DNA of 64,000 nucleotides from Trichoplax adhaerens (lineage: Eukaryota; Animalia; Placozoa), in assembly GCF_000150275.1 (NCBI RefSeq), contig NW_002060943.1, forward strand, positions 11,346,878-11,410,877. Direction: 5' to 3'. The notes beneath the pieces are model-generated. The model had not been told where the DNA came from and did no database searches. It saw nothing but the letters and a program-made list of their open reading frames with translations. Below are positions 42,605 through 55,200 of this stretch, piece by piece. Both the position numbers and the translations under genes were made by a program. How positions within the stretch are numbered: position 1 is the stretch's first letter; the number at the start of each line of letters is the position of its first letter.

Positions 42605-43130
42605 GATACTGTATTCTCTACCGTACTATACCGTAAAGATTGGGGGGGGGGTACTGTACCGTCAGTACAGTATAGTGCACTGTTTCAGTGAGGAGTCTAC
42701 AGCTAGTACAATAGTACAACAGTCAGATAATTTGATTTTCGCGCCAGATGCAACCTTTCAGTGTGTACAGTACTCTCTTACGATGTATGTACTGTGAAGT
42801 AGTACTGTACACTGTACTGTCCACTGCCAACAGGTACAGTACAGTACAGTACAGTACTGTACTGCATTGTACTGTACTGTACTGTACTGCATTGTACTGT
42901 ACTGTACTGTACTGCATTGTACTGTACTGTACTGTACTGCATTGTACTGTACTGTACTGTACTGTACTAGCATGGACCTCTACAGTACAGTACTGTACTG
43001 TACAGTACTGTACACTACTGTACTGTAGGTCTACAGTACTGTAGCATGGGCCAAAGGCCGTATCGGTACTGTACTGGTACCGTAAATACGATACAATTTT
43101 AATCTTCAAGGTTAAAGCGGAACCTGTACT
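42605..43130. repeat. Large TACTG/CAGTA microsatellite array with internal inversions
   Basis: (tactg)n with periodic tgcat interruptions at ~42855-42967, flanked by opposite-orientation (tacag)n. A G11 run lies at 42642. Confidence 0.95.
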
Positions 43131-44499
43131 GGCAACGATGAGCAACGATGAGCTCTAATGTTAATAGCCCAAAACCCAAGATGTCATTTTTCAGGTAAGC
43201 AAAGACATATTATTCTACCTCTGGCATACTGGTCTTGTCGAACAGAAGTACAAATTTCATTAAAAACTGCTACAAACAAGCACTACTTTCATTGTGTCTT
43301 GTGTTAGCCTGAAGCAATGTCTGTATTGTATACATTATATATGGATATACGAGTATGCGGGTATACAAAGTACCAGTATGGACTCCTACTACAAGAGCAC
43401 GAGCATCGGCCATTGCAGTCTATAGCTAAGATGAAATGAAGCATTTAGGCAGATATTTAGCCATAGTTAGCTAGATACCATATGATTACAAAATAGGATA
43501 CTCAAGCTTGATTGTGATAGTAGACACAAACATCAAACTTGTAGAAAGGATGAAAAGGAACCTGTTGGCAAAGTAGGCTGTTTTGAGATATCAAGGATGC
43601 GAGCCATTCTCTTGACAAATTCATTTGCAGAAGTACAGTGTTAATTAATTGTAACTAGCATACAACCCACTCTCTATAATAATTAGAAAGTAGTAAAATG
43701 ACAAATCTATGACTGGTGAAATGATTGCATTTAAAAAATATGTACACAACTTGAATAATACAATTAGTCGGGTAACAGGATACTTCATGCAGTGATCGTC
43801 AATTTGTTATGATGGAATGATCTAGGCCTTGCAGTCGTCATCAAATCTTTCCCATCCTCTGTGGGTGTAAAGGCTTTATTTACACCTAATAGTAGGGATA
43901 AGCGTGGTAGTAACTCGTTCTACACATATTTATTTTCGTAAAATTTTGTTAATATTATACTGTACCAATAAATTTCCTGTTCAGAATTTTGCTCGTTGCA
44001 CGCCCAATACCGCATCGAAAGTGATGACTATCATCATTTCGATGAAATTATTTACTGTACTTTGGCATCTCGCTGATTCATTCCTATGACAATAATTAAT
44101 GGAAATTGACAATTTACAATTCGAAAACTCATCGTTTCTTTTCGGACTGTATAATTTAATGTGCGTTAAATTATTTACAATCAGTAACCAAGATCTGAAG
44201 CTTTATAGTCATAGTAAACTTACTATTGATATACGAGTATTAGGGACTGCTAGAGGTTGCTCGAGTATATTGCCTCTTAATGATATGGTATTTATTGACT
44301 TTTAATACGCATTGGAAGATTAATTTAAAAATTTCTTAAACAGATATATAGGGTTGGGTATCGTTCTTTCCTCAGCCGTATTATTCTTACTTGTCAATAC
44401 CGGAAGTATCGTCAATAAGCCAAAAAATTCGATTAAATCTACAGTAAGAAATTTATTGCTCTTTCCCCACTAAACGTAAATTGCTTTAAATTACTGAAG

Positions 44500-45345
44500 A
44501 TGTAGAGATGAAAGCCATTAGTTAAAACCTAATTAAAATATTTTAAGTGATAATATCCACAATCGTGCTGCTGTGTTAATGTATCAAGTGCTTAATTATG
44601 CTAACTATTTAGTCAGTTTTACTTTCAGCTTTATAGTTATTCATTTCTTTCTTTCTTAAAAGCAAAATACTTCAAGATGGGATGAATAAATCATTGGATC
44701 CTTCCTTCCTTTCAATATTTTAAATGGAATCACTTAAGCTTTCTTCTCCGTATTGTTTGAAAAAGTGTGATACAGAAAATGAATTCAATCTATAATTTAT
44801 CTGCTCTCACTTTTACGATATGAAAGCTATTAGAGTAATGCATTTATCTTTGATGTTATCCGCTATCTATCTCTAATGTCTTTTTATTCCCACTAATTTA
44901 TAATTACATCGCTGAAGGCTAAATGTTGTAAATACTTATTGTATTGTGTCTTCAATAAAATGTGATAACAGCCCTGCAACTAGTGTTCCACATTCTATTC
45001 GATTTGACCATTTTGACATAAATTCGATTCAATTCGAAATTTGTGCAAGTAAAATTCGGTTTATTTTTACGTGAATATACAATAAATAGTCATTTGAAAT
45101 TGTATATTTGTAAATTTATTGGCGTATACCATTATAATATTAGTTCTATAGAGAGAAAATAAAGAATTTCATATCAAGCAACTAGTAAATAGACATCATT
45201 TATGACAGATGTTAAAACGTTCATTTGCAAAATAGCCAATGTGCCGTGTTTGGTAAATGCCCGTGTATGTCAAAACGCTATTAGGACCACTATAATTTAT
45301 AATTGCAATATAGAATTAATAACAAAGGTCAAAGATACAAATACA
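44500..45345 (+). repeat. Diverged direct copy of the calcineurin B 3' flank (partner ~51140-51945)
   Basis: Shared collinear blocks agcaaaatacttcaaga, aaaagtgtgatacagaaaa, tattagagtaatgcatttatctt, gagagaaaataaagaatttcatatca and tttggtaaatgcccgt. Confidence 0.92.
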
Positions 45346-45759
45346 GGATAATATGTTTAAATCTTGTTATGTAACAGCGATAAATACTACGATATATCTA
45401 AATCTTGCTACAATTCTGATATCTTAGTATGTTTCAGTCTTAGCATAATTCATAATGCATGTTTTATTTGCAATCTTAGCTTAACTCTTATACTCTATGA
45501 TGTGTTGCAATCTTAATACTCTATGATAAGTTGAAATCTTTGTGGAGTTCTAATACTGAGCGATATTTTGTAATCATTGCGCAACTCAAATTTGTCGCAA
45601 TCTTAGGGTACCGTACCCTGACACTCTGATATGTAGCACTATTAGTGCAACTCTGATGTATTACTATGATTTAGTTCCAATTCATTTTATTTCAACTACT
45701 ATTACATGCAGCTTTATTATCTGTGTCTTTCTTTTCAATGTTGATTCCATAACGTGCCT

Positions 45760-46984: not shown

Positions 46985-47445
46985 TTTTTAAAGTTTAGTT
47001 ATAAATTTGGATATTATTGCTATTAATCTCAGATAAATTTATCGCCCAGATTTCTACAAAGTAGAAAGACAGTAACAACATACTGCATGGTCCTAGTGCA
47101 AAACAAGATTTCATTAATATTTACATAGCGCTAATAAGTTATTTTCCTTCGTCTTGTTTCTAAAATTTTTAACAGGAGGAATACTCTAGCTCTACCTTAA
47201 AGAATCGATTGTTGCACCTAAATTAACGAGGATGGAAGGCTTTATACTGAATGGAAAGATTTACTTTCGAGGTCAACATCCCTTTGGTAATGCGGTGAAA
47301 CTGTTCAACAATGTCCAATAAATTATGTAGCGCTACAGGCTGCACCTTATTATTAAGAGATAGATTTCTGGACGATAAACTCCCAATAAATAGCCCTCGA
47401 TGAATCTTATCTTCTGTATAACGAATTACAATTGGAAATTTAGCA
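46985..47445 (+). pseudogene. Inverted decayed copy of the ANAPC1 first coding exon and flanks (partner ~40985-41695)
   Basis: 47232-47321 encodes MEGFILNGKIYFRGQHPFGNAVKLFNNVQ* versus ANAPC1 MEDFIPNGKIYYRDRHPLGKN. The flanking intron sequence also aligns in reverse complement. Confidence 0.88.
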
Positions 47446-48007
47446 ATAGTATATACTGTACATATAATTATAAGATACAATAGATACAATTAACAAACGA
47501 ATTATGTATGACAATGAATAATGCATACATATTTTAGGGGTTAGTATGTTTATTTAGGACTAAATCGTTTGAAACAATTCATGATTTAAACAGTCGGACA
47601 TCCTCTTAATCCCTTTGGGTGAATTACATGTCTATGAGTATTTAGAAAAGAAATAGACTAGAGCCGAATCTAGAGTTAGAGTTGCTACGACATGTGCCAT
47701 ATATCCATGAGAATTAAACGCTTGCTCGAACTGGGAGCTAATTATACAGTGCACGATACGTAGTTGTCAATCATTAGGAGTTCTCGGCTTATCAAATGTC
47801 AATCATTTATTGACGCCTTTATGATCAACTCTAAGAAGCAATTAAGTATGATTATTAAGTTAATTGAGTCTAAACTGCTATCTATTAAACATGATTGTAC
47901 ACTGTTTCAGTTAAAAGTCCATTAATAGAGATTGGTACTTATATTGGAAAAATCGAAGAAGTTTATTTAAGGGTTAACCGATAAGAACTCGTTAAGATTG
48001 GATCAAG

Positions 48008-48388
48008 ATGAGTAGAATGGCTCATATTTTGATAAAAGATCTCACCATGCAGGCCTTTGTTGGTATTCGCGAAGAGGAATTTCGCAATCCTCAAACTGTT
48101 GTATTATCCCTAAAAATATTTACAGATATTAATTTAGCACGGCAAAAGGATGATATTCACTATACTCTGAACTATGTCAAGGTGATTGAGGAAATTAGAT
48201 TAATAGTTAAAAGACAACACCATAAATTATTGGAATATCTTGGGGGTGATATTATCTCTCATCTCTTTGCTTCGTTTGATGCAATCCAACATATTGAGCT
48301 AAAAGTAATAAAACCGAAGGTTGTTCCCGATACAAAAGAAGTCGGTGTTTTAATCAGTCAAGATCGAAGCTCATATGAAGCGCAGTGA
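48008..48388 (+). CDS. folB: Dihydroneopterin aldolase / dihydroneopterin-triphosphate epimerase (FolB/FolX T-fold family), intronless
   Basis: 126-aa ORF with family motifs IKDL..FVGIREEE..Q, DD..TLNY, LLEYL and IKP..VGVLI. Residues equivalent to DHNA catalytic Glu, Tyr, Glu and Lys are present. Confidence 0.88.
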   Translation: MSRMAHILIKDLTMQAFVGIREEEFRNPQTVVLSLKIFTDINLARQKDDIHYTLNYVKVIEEIRLIVKRQHHKLLEYLGGDIISHLFASFDAIQHIELKVIKPKVVPDTKEVGVLISQDRSSYEAQ

Positions 48389-51139
48389 AATTTTACCACG
48401 AAAATCATAATGGTCAAATAAGATCAAGTGCAATGCAGAATCTATTATTTGCTCGATTTTAAGAAGTTTTGAAATAATTTTTTGCTATTTAGCATTGAAC
48501 CTCGTTTTCAAGTTAACATTAGAAATTAGAACAAAGGTAAATTAAAGACAGAAGTTATACCTCCTGTCATACGTAGAAAATAGCAAAACAAAGCTAGATA
48601 TTGTAACATAATATACAATCACATTCTGTTTAGCACTGTGTTACGGTGTTGCCTTGTCATTAGGATAGTTTAATAAGTACAGTAGTAGCTAGTATGGAGA
48701 ATATCCATATTTGTAGTGCTAGGTAGATAAATAATGCCTTAACGTGGATGTTGGTTGTAATAGTTCATTACATACTTGATATTGATTATTATTGTGTGAT
48801 AGATAGCAGTAAGATGATTTAAGTTCTTGTTGATGATAGTTGAATTAGACAACCTACGAGCTTAGATTAAGATTAAGCATGAGTAAGAGATTCAAAATAT
48901 TTACTGATAGAAAAGCTATGTAAGGAACATCTCAGTTCGAGATGTTTCTCCTAGTAAGGTATAATAATAATACTGTTGTTGTTTAAAAATTAGACGGTTC
49001 CTATATAAACGGGAAAATTGAGTTGAATGGTGTGGTAAGAAGTTGTAGATGTATCTTTGCTAACAAAAGTTTCATCTTTACAGTCCTTTGCTTTGTGTGT
49101 TTAACGTTAAGTAAAAGGGCGTTTAAGTCAGTAGCTACTTATAGACTTTTACTGTACGTTACCTTGTCGCAGAAGTGAAATTGTGACACAATGATACCAT
49201 ATTAACTGTAAGTAAGTTATGTGATAGATATATTATACCAGCTAGCCAATCACTATGTAGCATAGGCAACTATAAAAGAAGACTGTCTAGCGAATATTAG
49301 TTAGTTACGCATTACACATGAATACGGGCGAGTTCGGCTAATAAATACTTTATATTTGTATCTATTGACTCCTTTTCCTGCCTTTAATTTACAAAGCCAG
49401 GGAATATCATTACAGATATCGAAGAAAATCAAATTATACTGTATTTTTAAGACGGAACGAGATAAGAAAGATGGAAAAGCTGGAATATTCCGGATGGTTA
49501 CGATATCTACAATTCCGTGTTATATATATTAATAAAGTTTTTTCTTTGAGATCGTTGCATTGGGAAGTGATACCTTAACCAAACCATCGACAGGTGTAGG
49601 TGTGGTACGGTTTGGTGAGCCTTTGAGCTAAATATGGTCCTTGCAAGAACAGTTCGATCGAGACAATGTATAATCGATTGCCGAATGTGCTGCACACTAC
49701 ATATACATTACACACGATATCTATAAATCAATGTAATTTACGAGGCTAATTATAATGCTATCTGTTGTGTATTTTCGTGGGGAACAGGTTCGAACTCAAA
49801 GAAATACACGTGCTTCTTTTTCTAGGCTACAAGCTAACTTTATTTCGCATTACTTCTGTATACATATTATCGTTTAACAGTATCTATAGATACGAACCGA
49901 GTCAGTCAAACAGTGCTACCTTACTATACTAACATTAACTAAGTCTAAGATTCAGATATATGACACTATCCTGTAGCTAGCTAACATTCACTGTCCTCGT
50001 CCTCGCCAGTACCTTAAAACAAAGTTATGACTATTTTCTCTAAACACTGATCCAATCATTGTGTGCTTCATTCTGTTGGATCTATTTCTACTGAGTAAGT
50101 AAGTACAAAGTAGCGATCTCTTTTAAAGAGGCATTAATCAAAAACAATTTTCTTCTGAGGATATAAAGTAAATCTTAAAACTTTACTATCTTTGGCACTA
50201 TGTGGCGAACAACTCCAATTGGGCAAGGTTATTATAAGGCTCCGATCCTAATAATAATACAAAACTATGAGATCAATTTATCGGACTTGCATAACGTTTT
50301 GAGTAGGATTAAGCGCTTGTTTTCAATTATGTGTGTTAATAATTTTCATAAACGACAACAGGTCATTATTAGACTAACAAAATCTTCGTAGATCAGCATA
50401 AAAAGCAATTAAATTGCTGTGCTTAAATACATTACATTCATCTTTATGAATACAATAGTTAAAACAAGGCAGAATGGGGCATATTTTTCACCTGGAACAC
50501 AGAAGATACGTCATACTGTACTATGAAAAAAAAAGGCCTAATCATTTACGTCCTAGAGATATACTATCGCCGTGGCAGTGCAAATATCCATATCTTGATA
50601 ACAGCAGTCCCATTCTTCTCCAGAAGTAATTGCACGTTTGATGTATCGTTTTAAATATCATGTATTAGGGGAATATCTCTTATCCGACTTCAGTTTTGCA
50701 GGCCAATAACTCATTCTCTAATTGCAGAGAAACTTCCATATTTAAACAGGATATAAAAGCTCAGAAGCGAAAAAACTATAAAAATTCAGCTGTTATATTT
50801 AGAGATGGTAGATTGCTTAATACGATGAATGATTAACATCAACAATTTGCAATCCAATCAGCAATTGTTTCTTTTCAAAGAATAATCTGATGTACGATAA
50901 ATGAATTATTTACAGTCAGTAACTAAGATTTGAAACTTCATAGTCGCAGTAAAGTTGTGTCTCGTATTATTGGTTAATTGCCATGCAATGAAATGATCTA
51001 TTGACTCTATGCTTTGTAAGCTAATTTAACAGTTTATTAAAGATAAATATGTGGAATTGGATATCGCACTTTTCCCAGTCTTTATTATTGCTTATCAGCA
51101 TCGAAAGCACAGTCAGTAAACCAAAATATAAATAAATAA

Positions 51140-51945
51140 TGCTATTATTTAAAATCTAGCTAAAATAAATTATATGATGTGATAAAATTTGCAATCATGC
51201 TGTAGTGCTGTAGTTCCAGATACTTAAATTTTTATTGAATTATCATTGCTAATTAATCGAAGTTATTTTTTAGCTTTATACTGTAGTCATAAATATGTTT
51301 CTTAGTAGCAAAATACTTCAAGACGGAATGGATAAATCGTTGGATTCTTCCTTCCTTTCTTTCAATAATTATAATAAAATGAATAACGTAGGCTTTCTTC
51401 TCCGTATACAGTAGTTTGGAAAAGTGTGATACAGAAAAATGAATTTAATCTATAATTTATCTGCTCTCATTCTTACAGTATGAAAATTATTAGAGTAATG
51501 CATTTATCTTAGATGTTATCCACTAACTACGAGTATCTCCGATATCTTCGTATGTGCAGCTAATTTACAATTACTTCCTTGGCAAGGTAAACGTTGTAAA
51601 TACTTATCGTATTGTGTATCCAATAAAAGTAATGACAGTAATCCTAACCCTAATGACACCTTATTTTTACGCGAGTGTATAATAAATAGCCATTGAAATT
51701 GTATATTTGTAAATTTATTGGCCTATACCTCTATAACATTAGCTCTATGGAGAGAAAATAAAGAATTTCATATCAGGCAACTAGTAAATAGGCATCGTTT
51801 ACGACAAAAGGCAAAACGTTCATTTCCAAAATGGCCAACGTGCCATGTTTGGTAAATGCCCGTATACGTCAAAATGCTATTAGGATCATTATTATATATA
51901 ATTGCAATATAGAATTAACAAAGGTTACAGATACCAATACAGTAT
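51140..51945 (+). repeat. Calcineurin B 3' UTR/flank, partner of the 44.5-45.3 kb copy
   Basis: Collinear direct similarity to 44500-45345. Confidence 0.9.
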
Positions 51946-52286
51946 AAAGTATGTATCATTTAAAGGATTATAGTTACAAATATAAACTAAATAAACTGCG
52001 TATCTAGTCGGGAGCTGATGCATACAGTCGGTTTAAGAGAAATTACGTAGATATTACAGAAATTAATTCTAAGGAGATTTAAGATATTACATCATTATTA
52101 CCTGGAGCAACACTAAAATACAAATTCATAATTACTTTTTATTTAACATTTTACCAGTAATATTTCCTACTATGAATAGGATACGATATGATGTCTGATA
52201 GCGGTACTAATAATTAATATAATAATATTAGTGATATATTTAGAAGAAGCGATTATACAAGCATCATAAGCATACAAATGCATTGA

Positions 52287-55200
52287 TTAGACATCTACAA
52301 CCATCTTCTTGTGAATATCTGTTGAGGCTACGACCTAAGACAATATCGAACAAATGAATAACAGAAGTCAGTACAAAATGTTTATTATTAAAATAGAAAT
52401 GCACCTTTCAAATCAGACTTATAACCAAAATATTACAATTAATCATGGAAGTGACAAAATTTTTACTAACTTTGCAAAATTCATCGAACGATATTTTTCC
52501 ATCTCCATCCGTGTCGGCATAGATAATAGTTTTGTCAACAATTTGTTGTAACTGTGTATCTTTGAGGTTGCTACCAACCATCATTTTTAGTACACGAAAT
52601 AATTCAGTATTCGTTATGTAGCCATCTTTATCCATATCATATATTCTAAAGGCAACTATATTGTATGGCAAATTAGTATCATTTTGAATCAAACTCGCTA
52701 TCTCAAGTTAACAATGGGAGTGCATTACTTTAATGTAATCGTAAAATATCTTAAGAATCAATAATAAATCGTAAACGCTGATATACGAGTATATTAAGAG
52801 TGCCAAATATACAGTACTTACACTTCAATTTTGATTCCCTGTCGCCTTTAACGCTAAAGAGTGAGACGCCGTGGATAAATTCTACCAAAAGTTAAAATAA
52901 AAAATAGACAAATAGACATGACAGAATTAAAATTTCTTATCTGGTTGTATTTGATAAATAAGCGAACAGTAATCGATCTTATTAATTATTATTATGTGAT
53001 GCATTTTTGCGGGATGCAAATTGTAATCTAAAAGGAATTCAAGGCCTTTACTGTACAGTATGTTACGGAAGTATCTTTGGATAGCTTTTGTACAATATAT
53101 ACAGTAAAAGAATCATCAACTACTTTTTAATAATTACCATATCGACGATTAGATATGAGTTCGTAAATGCATTAATAGATAGGGCCACTATTTTGAAGAC
53201 AATGGACAAATTTGTAAATGCCCCTAAGTTTGACGTAATATTTTTAAACCATTTTGCTATTGTGATATGAGCGTTATATTTAAACACGAAATCCTGCAAG
53301 TTTGCATATATTTTACAGTAAAGAACACAAATGATCTTTCATCATTACGTTTACAAGTAAGTTACGAAGCTGAGATTAAAGAATTTTCAGACTATAAATC
53401 CAATCAGGCTAAGTACTACATACTGTATAGCTGAATGATATCAGTTACGATTCTACTGTATGTAGAAGTATATACAAATAACACTTGCTTTGCAAAGAAA
53501 GACTACTACATGTATGAATTTGAAATTATTGTCTAAGTGAAAACTACGTGTGTGGTCAACTAAGTAATGGAATAGGCTAGCTCAATAAAATTCTTGAAAA
53601 AGGTAATAAAATCGCTAGAACTAAGGTGGCTGTTAATATTACTATAATAGCAATAAATTCCTTTAGTAGCAGAATAATAGGTTTAAGATATAGCGCATCG
53701 CAAAAATGTGTATACATTTCATACCTTTGAAGTCTACTTCACCATTGCCATCTTGATCAAAAATATCTATCACTCTTTGTACTAATGGATTTTGCTGCAA
53801 TTCTGGTAAATTCATAAATTCATCAACCGATAGAGATCCACTGTTATCCAAGTCCATCTTCTTAAATCGCTTTCCCAGACGCTTGACCTCGTCAGCGTCA
53901 ACTACAAGAAAAGTGATTGTGTATATTTAGCAAGAATACTGAAATGGTGATCATACGGGAGATCGAGGACTTTTTAACGAGAGCTGATGCGCTAGTTCAC
54001 AAGTGTTTTAACAATAAATTAAGAGGATTACCCTCACGCCTATAATATATCGTTATAATATACTTTATCTATAGTAATACATGTCCTTGATTGCACTTTC
54101 GCTTACTCGGCTACGATAATATCATAACTGTACGTTTACAATTAACCAGAGGAAAGAGTATATCTATATATACATGCATCCTTAATTAAAGCAAAAACTT
54201 TACTACAAGTAATACAGTCAAGTCGGTCGAAGGTGTTAGCTAAACTGTGTATTACTTTATCGACTAGGACACTAACGATATTAAATTGGTATACAATGTA
54301 TATGTCATGACATATATATATACAGTAACAAGTGTTGTTTGTGACTGTGTCAATGATTCTCTTCAAGTATGGTAAATGTTTGTACAAAACTAGTGATCTG
54401 TGGCTACGGCAATTTGCTCATACTTAGATAGACAAATAGTAGAATTAATTCAGTAGCTGGCACATTCTGTACTGCTATCGTTACAGCGAAATGTAATGAT
54501 TTATTAAGTCTTTTTCACCCACGTACTCGTGTTTTACAAGCAAAGTTCGTTACAAGTGCCAGCTTCTTTGTAGCGATATAGAACGTTATTAAGCTAATGA
54601 TATTAAGTAATTTGTAACTACCATATGTAAATGAGTTGTTGTCCACAGGGGACAATGAATAGTTTTTTAAAGACTATTATAATGAACTCATGAAACAATC
54701 AATGTAATAAATGGAATGTTGGTATCGCTGAGATCAAATGTCTATTCAATACGATGGGCCGGATCCTTTGTGAGATAGCTCAGTTCGTCTATGATTCCGT
54801 TTACAGTTCATGCTATGCACAATTGACATGGCTATGCACCAATAGTAACGTAATCTCTCGAGTACAACAAATACTAGTGTAAACTCATCCACTGCACATA
54901 AACATGTACTATACAGACTAATACGATAGTAAAATAAAAATAAGCAAAAAGCTATACTATACTTACAATTAGTGATCATCGGTATCGAAGCATCGTTTCC
55001 CTATCATAACAAATAACAATAACGTGAGGAAAATTCAAAAATAAAAGTTCTATCGGTACTTAATATCTTTTATAGTATCAGTATGTATATATCTATATCT
55101 ATATAATACATTGTCCAGAATCTTTGAAAGGAAGCTGATATGAAGGAGGGTTTTATAAGAAATAATAAACAAACAAATAACAGGCAATAAGCCAGTGCAA

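What the first reader, a model, noticed from the sequence alone, without database searches (positions are those of the whole stretch)
48008..48388. Intronless FolB/FolX pterin enzyme embedded in an animal-type chromosome: candidate horizontally acquired folate/pterin step
Seen: a single-exon, intact 126-aa T-fold gene among intron-rich genes. It has host-like composition, the same CAAGATG start context as the ValRS and calcineurin B genes, no obvious Shine-Dalgarno and no bacterial neighbours. Known: FolB (dihydroneopterin aldolase) acts in de novo folate synthesis, which animals are generally held to lack, and FolX epimerase makes monapterin. The N-half (FVGIREEE, LNY, LLE) resembles FolX, while the C-end (KP..V..VGVLI) resembles FolB. 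Inference: a domesticated bacterial gene giving the host a partial folate route, perhaps shared with an endosymbiont, or a monapterin/pterin-salvage branch fed by host GTP cyclohydrolase I.
Basis: partly seen in the sequence, partly recalled or inferred. Interest (0 to 1): 0.85.

Follow-up and report, generated by a model that had tools for sequence, protein, structure and literature searches.

The report
Lone FolB pterin enzyme gene in Trichoplax
The placozoan Trichoplax carries in its own chromosome an intact, intron-free gene for a bacterial-style dihydroneopterin aldolase (FolB) but lacks the next folate-synthesis enzymes; a 2014 paper already noted the gene, and its origin and use remain unresolved.

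Summary
Window 48008-48388 (+) is an intact 126-codon, single-exon FolB-domain gene on the 13-Mb scaffold of Trichoplax adhaerens. An independent Trichoplax sp. H2 assembly has it in the same place, between ANAPC1 and an EF-hand gene.

The protein keeps the four FolB catalytic residues and folds with high confidence as a dihydroneopterin aldolase (TM 0.88, rmsd 1.0 Å to solved enzymes). It passes NCBI's folB cut-off (marginally) and fails the FolX cut-off by a wide margin.

The host genome has GTP cyclohydrolase I (57 kb away) and PTPS. It has no DHPS, and its only HPPK lies on a 1.9-kb contig of the rickettsial symbiont.

A close relative of that symbiont has folE, folB, folK and folP of its own. 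Its FolB is only about 28% identical to the host protein over 61 residues. So the gene did not come recently from that lineage, and that lineage does not need it.

The nearest relatives (at most 38% identity) all lie in bacterial operons. Trees are star-like, so bacterial transfer is likely but not proven.

Maguire et al. 2014 already listed this "putative folB" with questionable provenance. Its existence is therefore known; only the details here are new. This scan earlier noted other intronless bacterial-type genes in this genome, not this one.

The parts
48008..48388 (+). Single-exon CDS (126 codons plus stop) of a FolB-family T-fold enzyme. The catalytic residues are E24, Y56, E76 and K102.
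   Evidence: ORF. Pfam FolB 91.8 bits. TIGR00525 folB 75.5 bits against a cut-off of 72.15. Catalytic columns align with E. coli FolB E21/Y53/E73/K98. AlphaFold2 pLDDT 94.9. Foldseek best hits are dihydroneopterin aldolases at TM 0.88, rmsd 1.0.
48004..48010 (+). CAAGATG start context. There is a second in-frame ATG at codon 4, which is the start used by the 123-aa public model.
   Evidence: P0001 is 123 aa and matches query residues 4-126. The motif frequency in the window is not above chance (9 against 7.5).
48037..48481 (+). Stretch covered by contigs of RNA or RNA-like runs, possibly marking the transcript body and a short 3' UTR.
   Evidence: RNA-Seq run X20 has a contig on 48060-48385 with no differences and nothing on 47036-47973. 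Run X18 (kind guessed) has a contig on 48037-48481. Run X19 has nothing on the CDS. The tool warns that DNA can be present in RNA libraries.
44109..45356 (+). Left copy of a ~1.2-kb direct repeat that brackets the gene. Whether it belongs to the gene's history is unknown.
   Evidence: 74-87% identity to 50842-51954. There are only these two copies in the whole genome.
50842..51954 (+). Right copy of the same direct repeat.

Best explanation
This is a genuine nuclear gene of Trichoplax that encodes a catalytically competent FolB-type T-fold enzyme, a dihydroneopterin aldolase with the usual side epimerase activity.

Inferred mechanism:
- Host GTP cyclohydrolase I makes dihydroneopterin triphosphate.
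- After dephosphorylation, this enzyme cleaves 7,8-dihydroneopterin to 6-hydroxymethyl-7,8-dihydropterin plus glycolaldehyde, or epimerises it to dihydromonapterin.
- The host has no HPPK or DHPS, so the product cannot feed host-autonomous folate synthesis. The enzyme therefore works as a side branch of host pterin metabolism. The fate of its product is unknown.

The gene most likely entered the placozoan line long ago from a bacterium and has since taken on host composition. The donor cannot be named, and it is not the present rickettsial symbiont lineage.

Shown: gene integrity, chromosomal location, family membership, conserved catalytic residues, the fold, and the absence of HPPK/DHPS in the host.
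Inferred: the activity, the substrate source, the bacterial origin and the age.
For: Location:
- Two independent assemblies carry the gene in the same animal-gene neighbourhood.
- A 2.3-kb contig of another run spans the gene and its upstream flank at a single depth.

Family and function:
- Pfam and NCBIfam folB cut-offs are met.
- E24, Y56 and E76 are invariant, and K102 nearly so, across 37 relatives. They align to E. coli FolB E21/Y53/E73/K98.
- The model has pLDDT 94.9 and matches solved aldolases at rmsd 1.0 Å.
- A 126-codon frame stays open in DNA of about 33% GC and keeps the catalytic residues, despite at least 62% divergence from every relative.

Bacterial affinity:
- The best relatives among 1.84 billion cluster representatives are 38% identical.
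- All ten contigs read for the eight inspected nearest relatives are bacterial operons. Six of the eight have pterin or folate neighbours (pteridine-reductase-like SDR, PTPS, folE, folK).
- The protein scores lower against profiles of fungal FOL1 FolB domains (53.8 and 42.2 bits) than the median bacterial hit does (69 and 57).
- It has a single domain and no intron, unlike the tandem fused opisthokont FolB-FolB (PMC4224340).

Pathway context:
- The host has GCH1 and PTPS but no DHPS, and the only HPPK is on a symbiont contig.
Against: - No supported clade joins the protein to any bacterial group.
- The AU test does not reject a clade with fungal FolB domains.
- Holozoan FolB sequences (Capsaspora, Sphaeroforma) and the Nematostella and Branchiostoma folB-folK genes could not be included.
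- The bacterial rows were chosen for similarity to the query, which biases the comparison.
- Evidence of transcription is thin: one short RNA-Seq contig, one contig from a run of guessed kind, and none in a third run.
- The H1 and H2 copies differ at only 2 of 381 bases (1 synonymous, 1 V18I), so selection cannot be measured.
- The TIGR00525 cut-off is passed by only 3 bits.
- No enzymatic test exists.
Confidence: 0.6

Rival explanations
1. Vertical relic. The gene is the last surviving FolB domain of the ancestral opisthokont folB-folB(-folK-folP) gene, retained in placozoans after other animals lost the pathway and after losing its introns and its partner domains.
For: - The AU test does not reject a clade of Trichoplax plus fungal FOL1 FolB domains (p 0.709).
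- A fungal FOL1 appears among the best 150 hits (rank 138, 54 bits).
- PMC4224340 infers folB-folB in the opisthokont ancestor and in Capsaspora and Sphaeroforma.
- Composition is fully host-like.
Against: - The protein scores worse against fungal FolB-domain profiles than typical bacterial FolBs do (rank 135 and 132 of 159).
- Identity to the fungal domain is 26%, against 38% to bacteria.
- It has a single domain and is intronless in an intron-rich genome.
- No relative above 50% identity exists outside Trichoplax in about 15 billion proteins.
- Under this reading, every other animal line would have had to lose the gene independently.
Confidence: 0.2
2. FolX-type epimerase. The enzyme acts on dihydroneopterin triphosphate to start a monapterin branch, which would supply a tetrahydromonapterin-like cofactor to host hydroxylases or NO synthases.
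For: - The best solved-structure sequence match is Pseudomonas aeruginosa FolX (E 2e-11), and E. coli FolX follows closely.
- The GI(R/K)EEE and LNY motifs are shared with FolX.
- The top database hit lies directly behind a pteridine-reductase/FolM-like SDR.
Against: - The FolX model NF008418 scores 60 bits against a cut-off of 152, while the folB cut-off is met.
- The fold matches aldolases (TM 0.88) better than FolX (0.83 and 0.76).
- The tree does not place it in the clade that holds E. coli FolX.
- The basic LRLRTF strand shared by the two FolX structures reads LTMQAF here.
Confidence: 0.1
3. Host-symbiont mosaic folate pathway. Host FolB makes hydroxymethyldihydropterin, which an intracellular bacterium carrying folK and folP turns into folate for both partners.
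For: - The host lacks HPPK and DHPS.
- A symbiont contig in the same assembly carries folK.
- Trichoplax nuclear dapF and lysA of bacterial origin set a precedent for shared pathways (PMC6879607).
Against: - The close relative of the rickettsial symbiont has its own folE, folB, folK and folP, so no gap needs filling there.
- The symbiont papers read here do not mention folate provisioning.
- The second symbiont (Ruthmannia) could not be examined.
Confidence: 0.08
4. Assembly artefact or contaminating bacterial DNA.
For: Small bacterial contigs do exist in this assembly (C642, C823).
Against: - The gene lies 11.4 Mb into a 13.26-Mb scaffold.
- It has the same neighbours in the separate H2 assembly.
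- Contigs from runs of seven studies hold the stretch.
- One 2.3-kb contig bridges the gene and its flank at uniform depth.
- GC3 is 29%, and there are no bacterial neighbours.
Confidence: 0.02

Closest known systems
Bacterial dihydroneopterin aldolase FolB (EC 4.1.2.25; PF02152, TIGR00525), e.g. the Vibrio cholerae, Bacillus anthracis, Yersinia pestis and E. coli enzymes
   Same: Length of about 120 aa, a single T-fold domain and the catalytic E/Y/E/K residues. The predicted structure superposes at rmsd 1.0 Å.
   Different: Only 24-27% identical to the solved enzymes, and at most 38% to any known protein. It is encoded in an animal nucleus without folK or folP partners, so its product has no known onward route in the host.
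FolX, dihydroneopterin triphosphate 2'-epimerase (E. coli, P. aeruginosa)
   Same: Same fold and catalytic residues. It shares the GI(K/R)EEE and LNY motifs, and FolX gives the best sequence E-value among solved structures.
   Different: It fails the FolX family cut-off by a wide margin, has a lower structural match and lacks the basic N-terminal strand motif.
Animal folB-folK genes of Branchiostoma floridae and Nematostella vectensis (PMC4224340)
   Same: Pterin-branch genes of bacterial type in animal genomes that lack folP. The paper interprets the Branchiostoma gene as transfer from a prokaryote.
   Different: Those are FolB-HPPK fusions, whereas the Trichoplax gene is FolB alone. They were not compared by sequence here because they were not available through the tools.
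Opisthokont FOL1-type FolB-FolB(-HPPK-DHPS)
   Same: Same domain family, and the AU test cannot exclude common descent.
   Different: FOL1 has tandem, fused domains, whereas this gene is a single free domain. The Trichoplax protein also scores lower against profiles of either fungal FolB domain than typical bacterial FolBs do.
Trichoplax nuclear dapF and lysA of bacterial origin (PMC6879607; PMC3641634 for dapF)
   Same: Bacterial-type metabolic genes sitting in the placozoan chromosome.
   Different: Those have identifiable bacterial affinities. FolB is absent from the 12-gene transfer list of PMC3641634, and its donor is unresolved.

Membership tests
FolB / dihydroneopterin aldolase (PF02152, TIGR00525) | Profile match above the curated cut-offs | tested here: met
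   Pfam 91.8 bits against 31.8. TIGR00526 folB_dom 91.9 against 45.05, and TIGR00525 folB equivalog 75.5 against 72.15, which is marginal.
FolB / dihydroneopterin aldolase (PF02152, TIGR00525) | Catalytic Glu, Tyr, Glu and Lys (E. coli E21, Y53, E73, K98) | tested here: met
   E24, Y56, E76 and K102 align to them. E24, Y56 and E76 are invariant and K102 nearly invariant in 37 relatives. The PDB titles Tyr53Phe and Lys98Ala confirm the numbering.
FolB / dihydroneopterin aldolase (PF02152, TIGR00525) | T-fold with four strands and two long helices | tested here: met
   AlphaFold2 pLDDT 94.9 and pTM 0.87. Foldseek gives TM 0.88 and rmsd 1.0 Å to 3o1k, 5f3m and 6ojo.
FolB / dihydroneopterin aldolase (PF02152, TIGR00525) | Homo-octameric assembly that forms the active sites between subunits | not tested
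   No complex prediction was run.
FolB / dihydroneopterin aldolase (PF02152, TIGR00525) | Aldolase activity on 7,8-dihydroneopterin | not testable with these tools
   Needs an enzyme assay or complementation of an E. coli folB mutant.
De novo folate pterin branch (FolE-FolB-FolK-FolP) | HPPK and DHPS present in the same genome | tested here: not met
   No DHPS is found in the assembly. The only HPPK is on the 1.9-kb contig C642, which has dense bacterial ORFs and is 91% identical to Candidatus Aquarickettsia rohweri.
FolX (dihydroneopterin triphosphate 2'-epimerase, NF008418) | Profile match above the curated cut-off | tested here: not met
   60.1 bits against a cut-off of 152. The protein is not in the clade with E. 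coli FolX.
FolX (dihydroneopterin triphosphate 2'-epimerase, NF008418) | Partner dihydromonapterin reductase (FolM) in the genome | not tested
   The host SDR repertoire was not searched. Only the top bacterial hit has a FolM/pteridine-reductase-like neighbour.
Opisthokont FOL1-type FolB | Tandem FolB-FolB, usually fused to HPPK-DHPS | tested here: not met
   There is one domain and one match in the genome. The flanking ORFs have no Pfam match.
Gene acquired by an animal from bacteria | Physically integrated among host genes | tested here: met
Gene acquired by an animal from bacteria | Nested with support inside a bacterial clade | tested here: inconclusive
   The trees are star-like, and AU p is 0.709 for the fungal grouping. 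Similarity and profile scores favour bacteria.
Gene acquired by an animal from bacteria | Transcribed in the host | tested here: inconclusive
   One RNA-Seq contig lies exactly on the CDS with an empty upstream flank, and one contig comes from a run of guessed kind. A third RNA run shows nothing.

The most novel reading that the evidence does not exclude
An animal-encoded dihydroneopterin aldolase diverts host-made dihydroneopterin into hydroxymethyldihydropterin. This product is either handed to an intracellular bacterium (for example the unexamined Ruthmannia symbiont) for folate synthesis, or it founds a placozoan-specific pterin such as a monapterin-type cofactor. Either way, an animal would take an active enzymatic part in the pterin branch that animals are thought to lack.
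Probability: 0.1. Interest if true: 0.7.

Novelty: already known. Interest (0 to 1): 0.35.

Why it matters
Animals are held to lack the pterin branch of folate synthesis, which is why sulfonamides are selective. A working FolB in an early-branching animal with two intracellular bacteria would be a small exception, and it could point to metabolic exchange of pterins between host and symbionts.

This report adds the following to the 2014 one-line mention:
- The gene is truly chromosomal.
- It is structurally and catalytically intact.
- It is aldolase-like and not FolX-like.
- It is not derived from the present rickettsial symbiont lineage.
- It stands alone in the host, without HPPK or DHPS.
- Its bacterial origin, though likely, cannot be proven from 120 residues.

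Tried and rejected
- The word-indexed protein search found only the protein itself.
- The ESM Atlas gave only generic bacterial FolB clusters.
The nearest bacterial relatives therefore could not be given organism names, and no donor is proposed.
- A constrained tree search on all 159 rows did not finish in 576 s. It was repeated on 64 rows.
- The search for opisthokont FolB-FolB proteins listed only fungi among its best 120 hits. Holozoan sequences are missing from every comparison.
- dN/dS between H1 and H2 has no power, with only 2 differences.
- An exact look-up of the 126-aa product found no further contigs.
- ORFs between the flanking repeats have no Pfam domains, so the idea of an LTR retrotransposon carrying the gene has no support beyond the repeats themselves.
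- Origin from the current rickettsial symbiont is rejected.
- Contamination or a chimeric assembly is rejected.
- The CAAGATG start context is not treated as evidence of domestication, because its frequency is at chance level.

Full report
**What is there**

Window 48008-48388 (+) holds an ATG-started open frame of 126 codons. It matches Pfam FolB (PF02152) end to end at 91.8 bits, against a cut-off of 31.8. Among NCBI's curated models:
- the folB equivalog TIGR00525 is just met (75.5 against 72.15);
- the FolX model NF008418 is far from met (60.1 against 152).

It is the only FolB match in the assembly. The assembly has 105.6 Mb in 1414 contigs, and the window lies 11.35 Mb into the 13.26-Mb scaffold. 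The 90% cluster of the protein also holds RDD40298.1, 'Dihydroneopterin aldolase [Trichoplax sp. H2]'. The genome is therefore Trichoplax adhaerens.

**Is it really in the animal chromosome?**

Yes.
- The separate H2 assembly carries the same gene between ANAPC1 (upstream, minus strand) and an EF-hand gene (downstream, minus strand).
- The two assemblies align at 98.4-99.4% over 15 kb. The protein differs at one residue (V18I) and the CDS at two bases.
- Contigs from runs of seven studies hold the stretch. One 2.3-kb contig bridges 46500-48471 at a single depth.
- CDS GC is 35.2% and GC3 is 29.1%, close to the flanks.

Contamination or a chimeric join is therefore rejected.

**Is it expressed?**

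The evidence is thin.
- One metatranscriptomic RNA-Seq run has a 337-nt contig lying exactly on 48060-48385, with nothing on the 1 kb upstream.
- A run of guessed RNA kind has a contig on 48037-48481.
- A third RNA run shows nothing on the CDS.

Contigs cannot show level or strand, and DNA can be present in RNA libraries. I count expression as weakly supported only.

**What kind of enzyme?**

In an alignment with 36 relatives, G19, E24, Y56 and E76 are invariant and K102 is nearly so. Aligned with E. coli FolB taken from the annotated K-12 record, they fall on E21, Y53, E73 and K98. These are the residues studied in the Yersinia Tyr53Phe and Lys98Ala structures listed.

AlphaFold2 gives pLDDT 94.9. 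Foldseek ranks dihydroneopterin aldolases from Vibrio, Bacillus anthracis and Yersinia first (TM 0.88, rmsd 1.0 Å). E. coli FolX is lower at TM 0.83 and Pseudomonas FolX at 0.76.

By sequence, the best solved match is Pseudomonas FolX (2e-11), closely followed by a FolB (3e-10). Even so, the curated cut-offs, the fold ranking and the tree all place the protein outside FolX proper.

**Pathway context in the host**
- GTP cyclohydrolase I is present as a multi-exon gene at C1414:11452089-11454089, 57 kb downstream of FolB.
- A multi-exon PTPS lies on C1412.
- DHPS is absent from the assembly.
- The only HPPK is on the 1.9-kb contig C642, which holds three tightly packed same-strand ORFs.

That HPPK is 91% identical to the HPPK of Candidatus Aquarickettsia rohweri. 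C642 therefore belongs to the rickettsial endosymbiont. The host can make the FolB substrate precursor but cannot carry the product on to folate.

**Symbiont test**

The Aquarickettsia genome has its own FolB (54 bits), DHPS (191 bits) and GTP cyclohydrolase I (238 bits), as well as HPPK. Its FolB aligns to the Trichoplax protein only over 61 residues at 28% identity (31 bits). The best database hit, by contrast, gives 91 bits and 38% over 115 residues.

Two points follow:
- The host gene is not a recent copy from this symbiont lineage.
- That lineage has no FolB gap for the host to fill.

The second symbiont (Ruthmannia) and the actual Grellia genome could not be examined. The symbiont papers I read do not discuss folate.

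**Origin**

An exhaustive HMMER pass over 1.84 billion cluster representatives found 2655 relatives. The best non-self hit is only 38% identical (E 2.4e-19).

Eight of the nearest relatives were inspected, and all ten contigs read for them are bacterial operons. Six of the eight have pterin or folate neighbours:
- a pteridine-reductase/FolM-like SDR overlapping the FolB start;
- tsaD-folB-folK;
- PTPS-folB next to folE;
- PTPS-SDR-folB/folK.

The other two have no recognisable pterin neighbours.

One fungal FOL1 appears at rank 138. Trees of 159 and 64 rows are star-like, and the Trichoplax branch joins no supported clade. It does not join the clade with E. coli FolB, the clade with E. coli FolX and the fungal domains, or the tsaD-folB-folK group.

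An AU test does not reject Trichoplax plus fungal FolB domains (p 0.709). The constrained tree even beat the short free search, which shows how little signal 121 columns hold.

Against profiles built from 120 fungal FOL1 proteins, the Trichoplax protein scores 53.8 bits (domain 1) and 42.2 bits (domain 2). This is below the median of the bacterial rows (69 and 57) and below E. coli FolB and FolX, at rank 135 and 132 of 159. So it shows no special affinity to the one opisthokont group available.

Taken together with the single free domain and the missing introns, I put ancient bacterial transfer at roughly 0.6-0.65 and vertical retention at about 0.2. Holozoan FolB and the cnidarian and amphioxus folB-folK genes were not available, and that is the main gap.

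**What was already known**

Maguire et al. [quoted passage not shown] They removed it from their trees because of poor alignment and marked its provenance as questionable. In the same paper they argue that the Branchiostoma folB-folK is a prokaryotic transfer.

Driscoll et al. 2013 (PMC3641634) list 12 candidate bacterial transfers in T. adhaerens without FolB. Kamm et al. 2019 (PMC6879607) mention nuclear dapF and lysA of bacterial origin.

The existence of the gene is thus known. New here are the proof of chromosomal residence in two assemblies, the intact catalytic set and fold, the aldolase-over-FolX call, the exclusion of the rickettsial symbiont lineage as donor or beneficiary, and the honest failure of phylogeny.

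**Other features of the locus**
- The gene is bracketed by a pair of ~1.2-kb direct repeats, 44109-45356 and 50842-51954, at 74-87% identity. They have no other copy in the genome. ORFs between them have no Pfam match. Whether they mark an old duplication or an insertion event is unexplained.
- A 550-bp dispersed element with at least 220 candidate copies (the 40 scored are 93-95% identical) sits 250 bp after the stop codon.

Noticed in passing
G000:C1414:11452089-11454089 (about 41 kb beyond the window's end): The host's only GTP cyclohydrolase I gene lies 57 kb downstream of FolB on the same scaffold. For one pre-named gene in 105.6 Mb, the chance of this is about 0.1%, or 1-2% if a dozen pterin genes are allowed. 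It could be coincidence or a loose pterin gene neighbourhood.
   Followed up: partly
window 44109-45356 and 50842-51954: A pair of ~1.2-kb direct repeats (74-87% identical, with indels) brackets the FolB gene almost symmetrically. They are the only two copies in the genome, and the H2 assembly has them too. No transposon domains lie between them.
   Followed up: partly
window 48639-49188: A 550-bp dispersed repeat lies 250 bp after the FolB stop codon. It has at least 220 candidate copies in the genome. The 40 scored copies are full-length (548-550 of 550 nt) and 93-95% identical, and read depth over it is very high in all runs. It looks like a young non-autonomous mobile element.
   Followed up: partly
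window 42809-43044: A dense array of GTACT/GTACA five-base units forms many overlapping direct and inverted repeats, and a spurious 140-aa ORF runs through it. It resembles the TA-CAG-TA / TA-CTG-TA clusters noted elsewhere in this genome (s1-767943).
   Followed up: no
L002 = G000:C642:1-1905: A small contig with three packed same-strand ORFs, including folK (HPPK). Its HPPK is 91% identical to that of Candidatus Aquarickettsia rohweri, so this is a fragment of the rickettsial endosymbiont left in the animal assembly.
   Followed up: yes
L022 = G000:C823:244-2447: A single-ORF bacterial-type PTPS/QueD (109.7 bits, 149-aa frame) on a small contig, probably also from the symbiont. It is distinct from the multi-exon host PTPS on C1412.
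   Followed up: no
L012 (Logan SRR33155360 contig): One of the nearest FolB relatives sits in a PTPS-folB cluster beside a divergent folE. Its other neighbours are ankyrin/SET/TPR/NB-ARC proteins, a gene mix typical of intracellular bacteria.
   Followed up: no
window 53749-53755 (-): The CAAGATG here reads as internal codons of an EF-hand loop (…DGNGEVDF…) and not as a start codon.
   Followed up: partly
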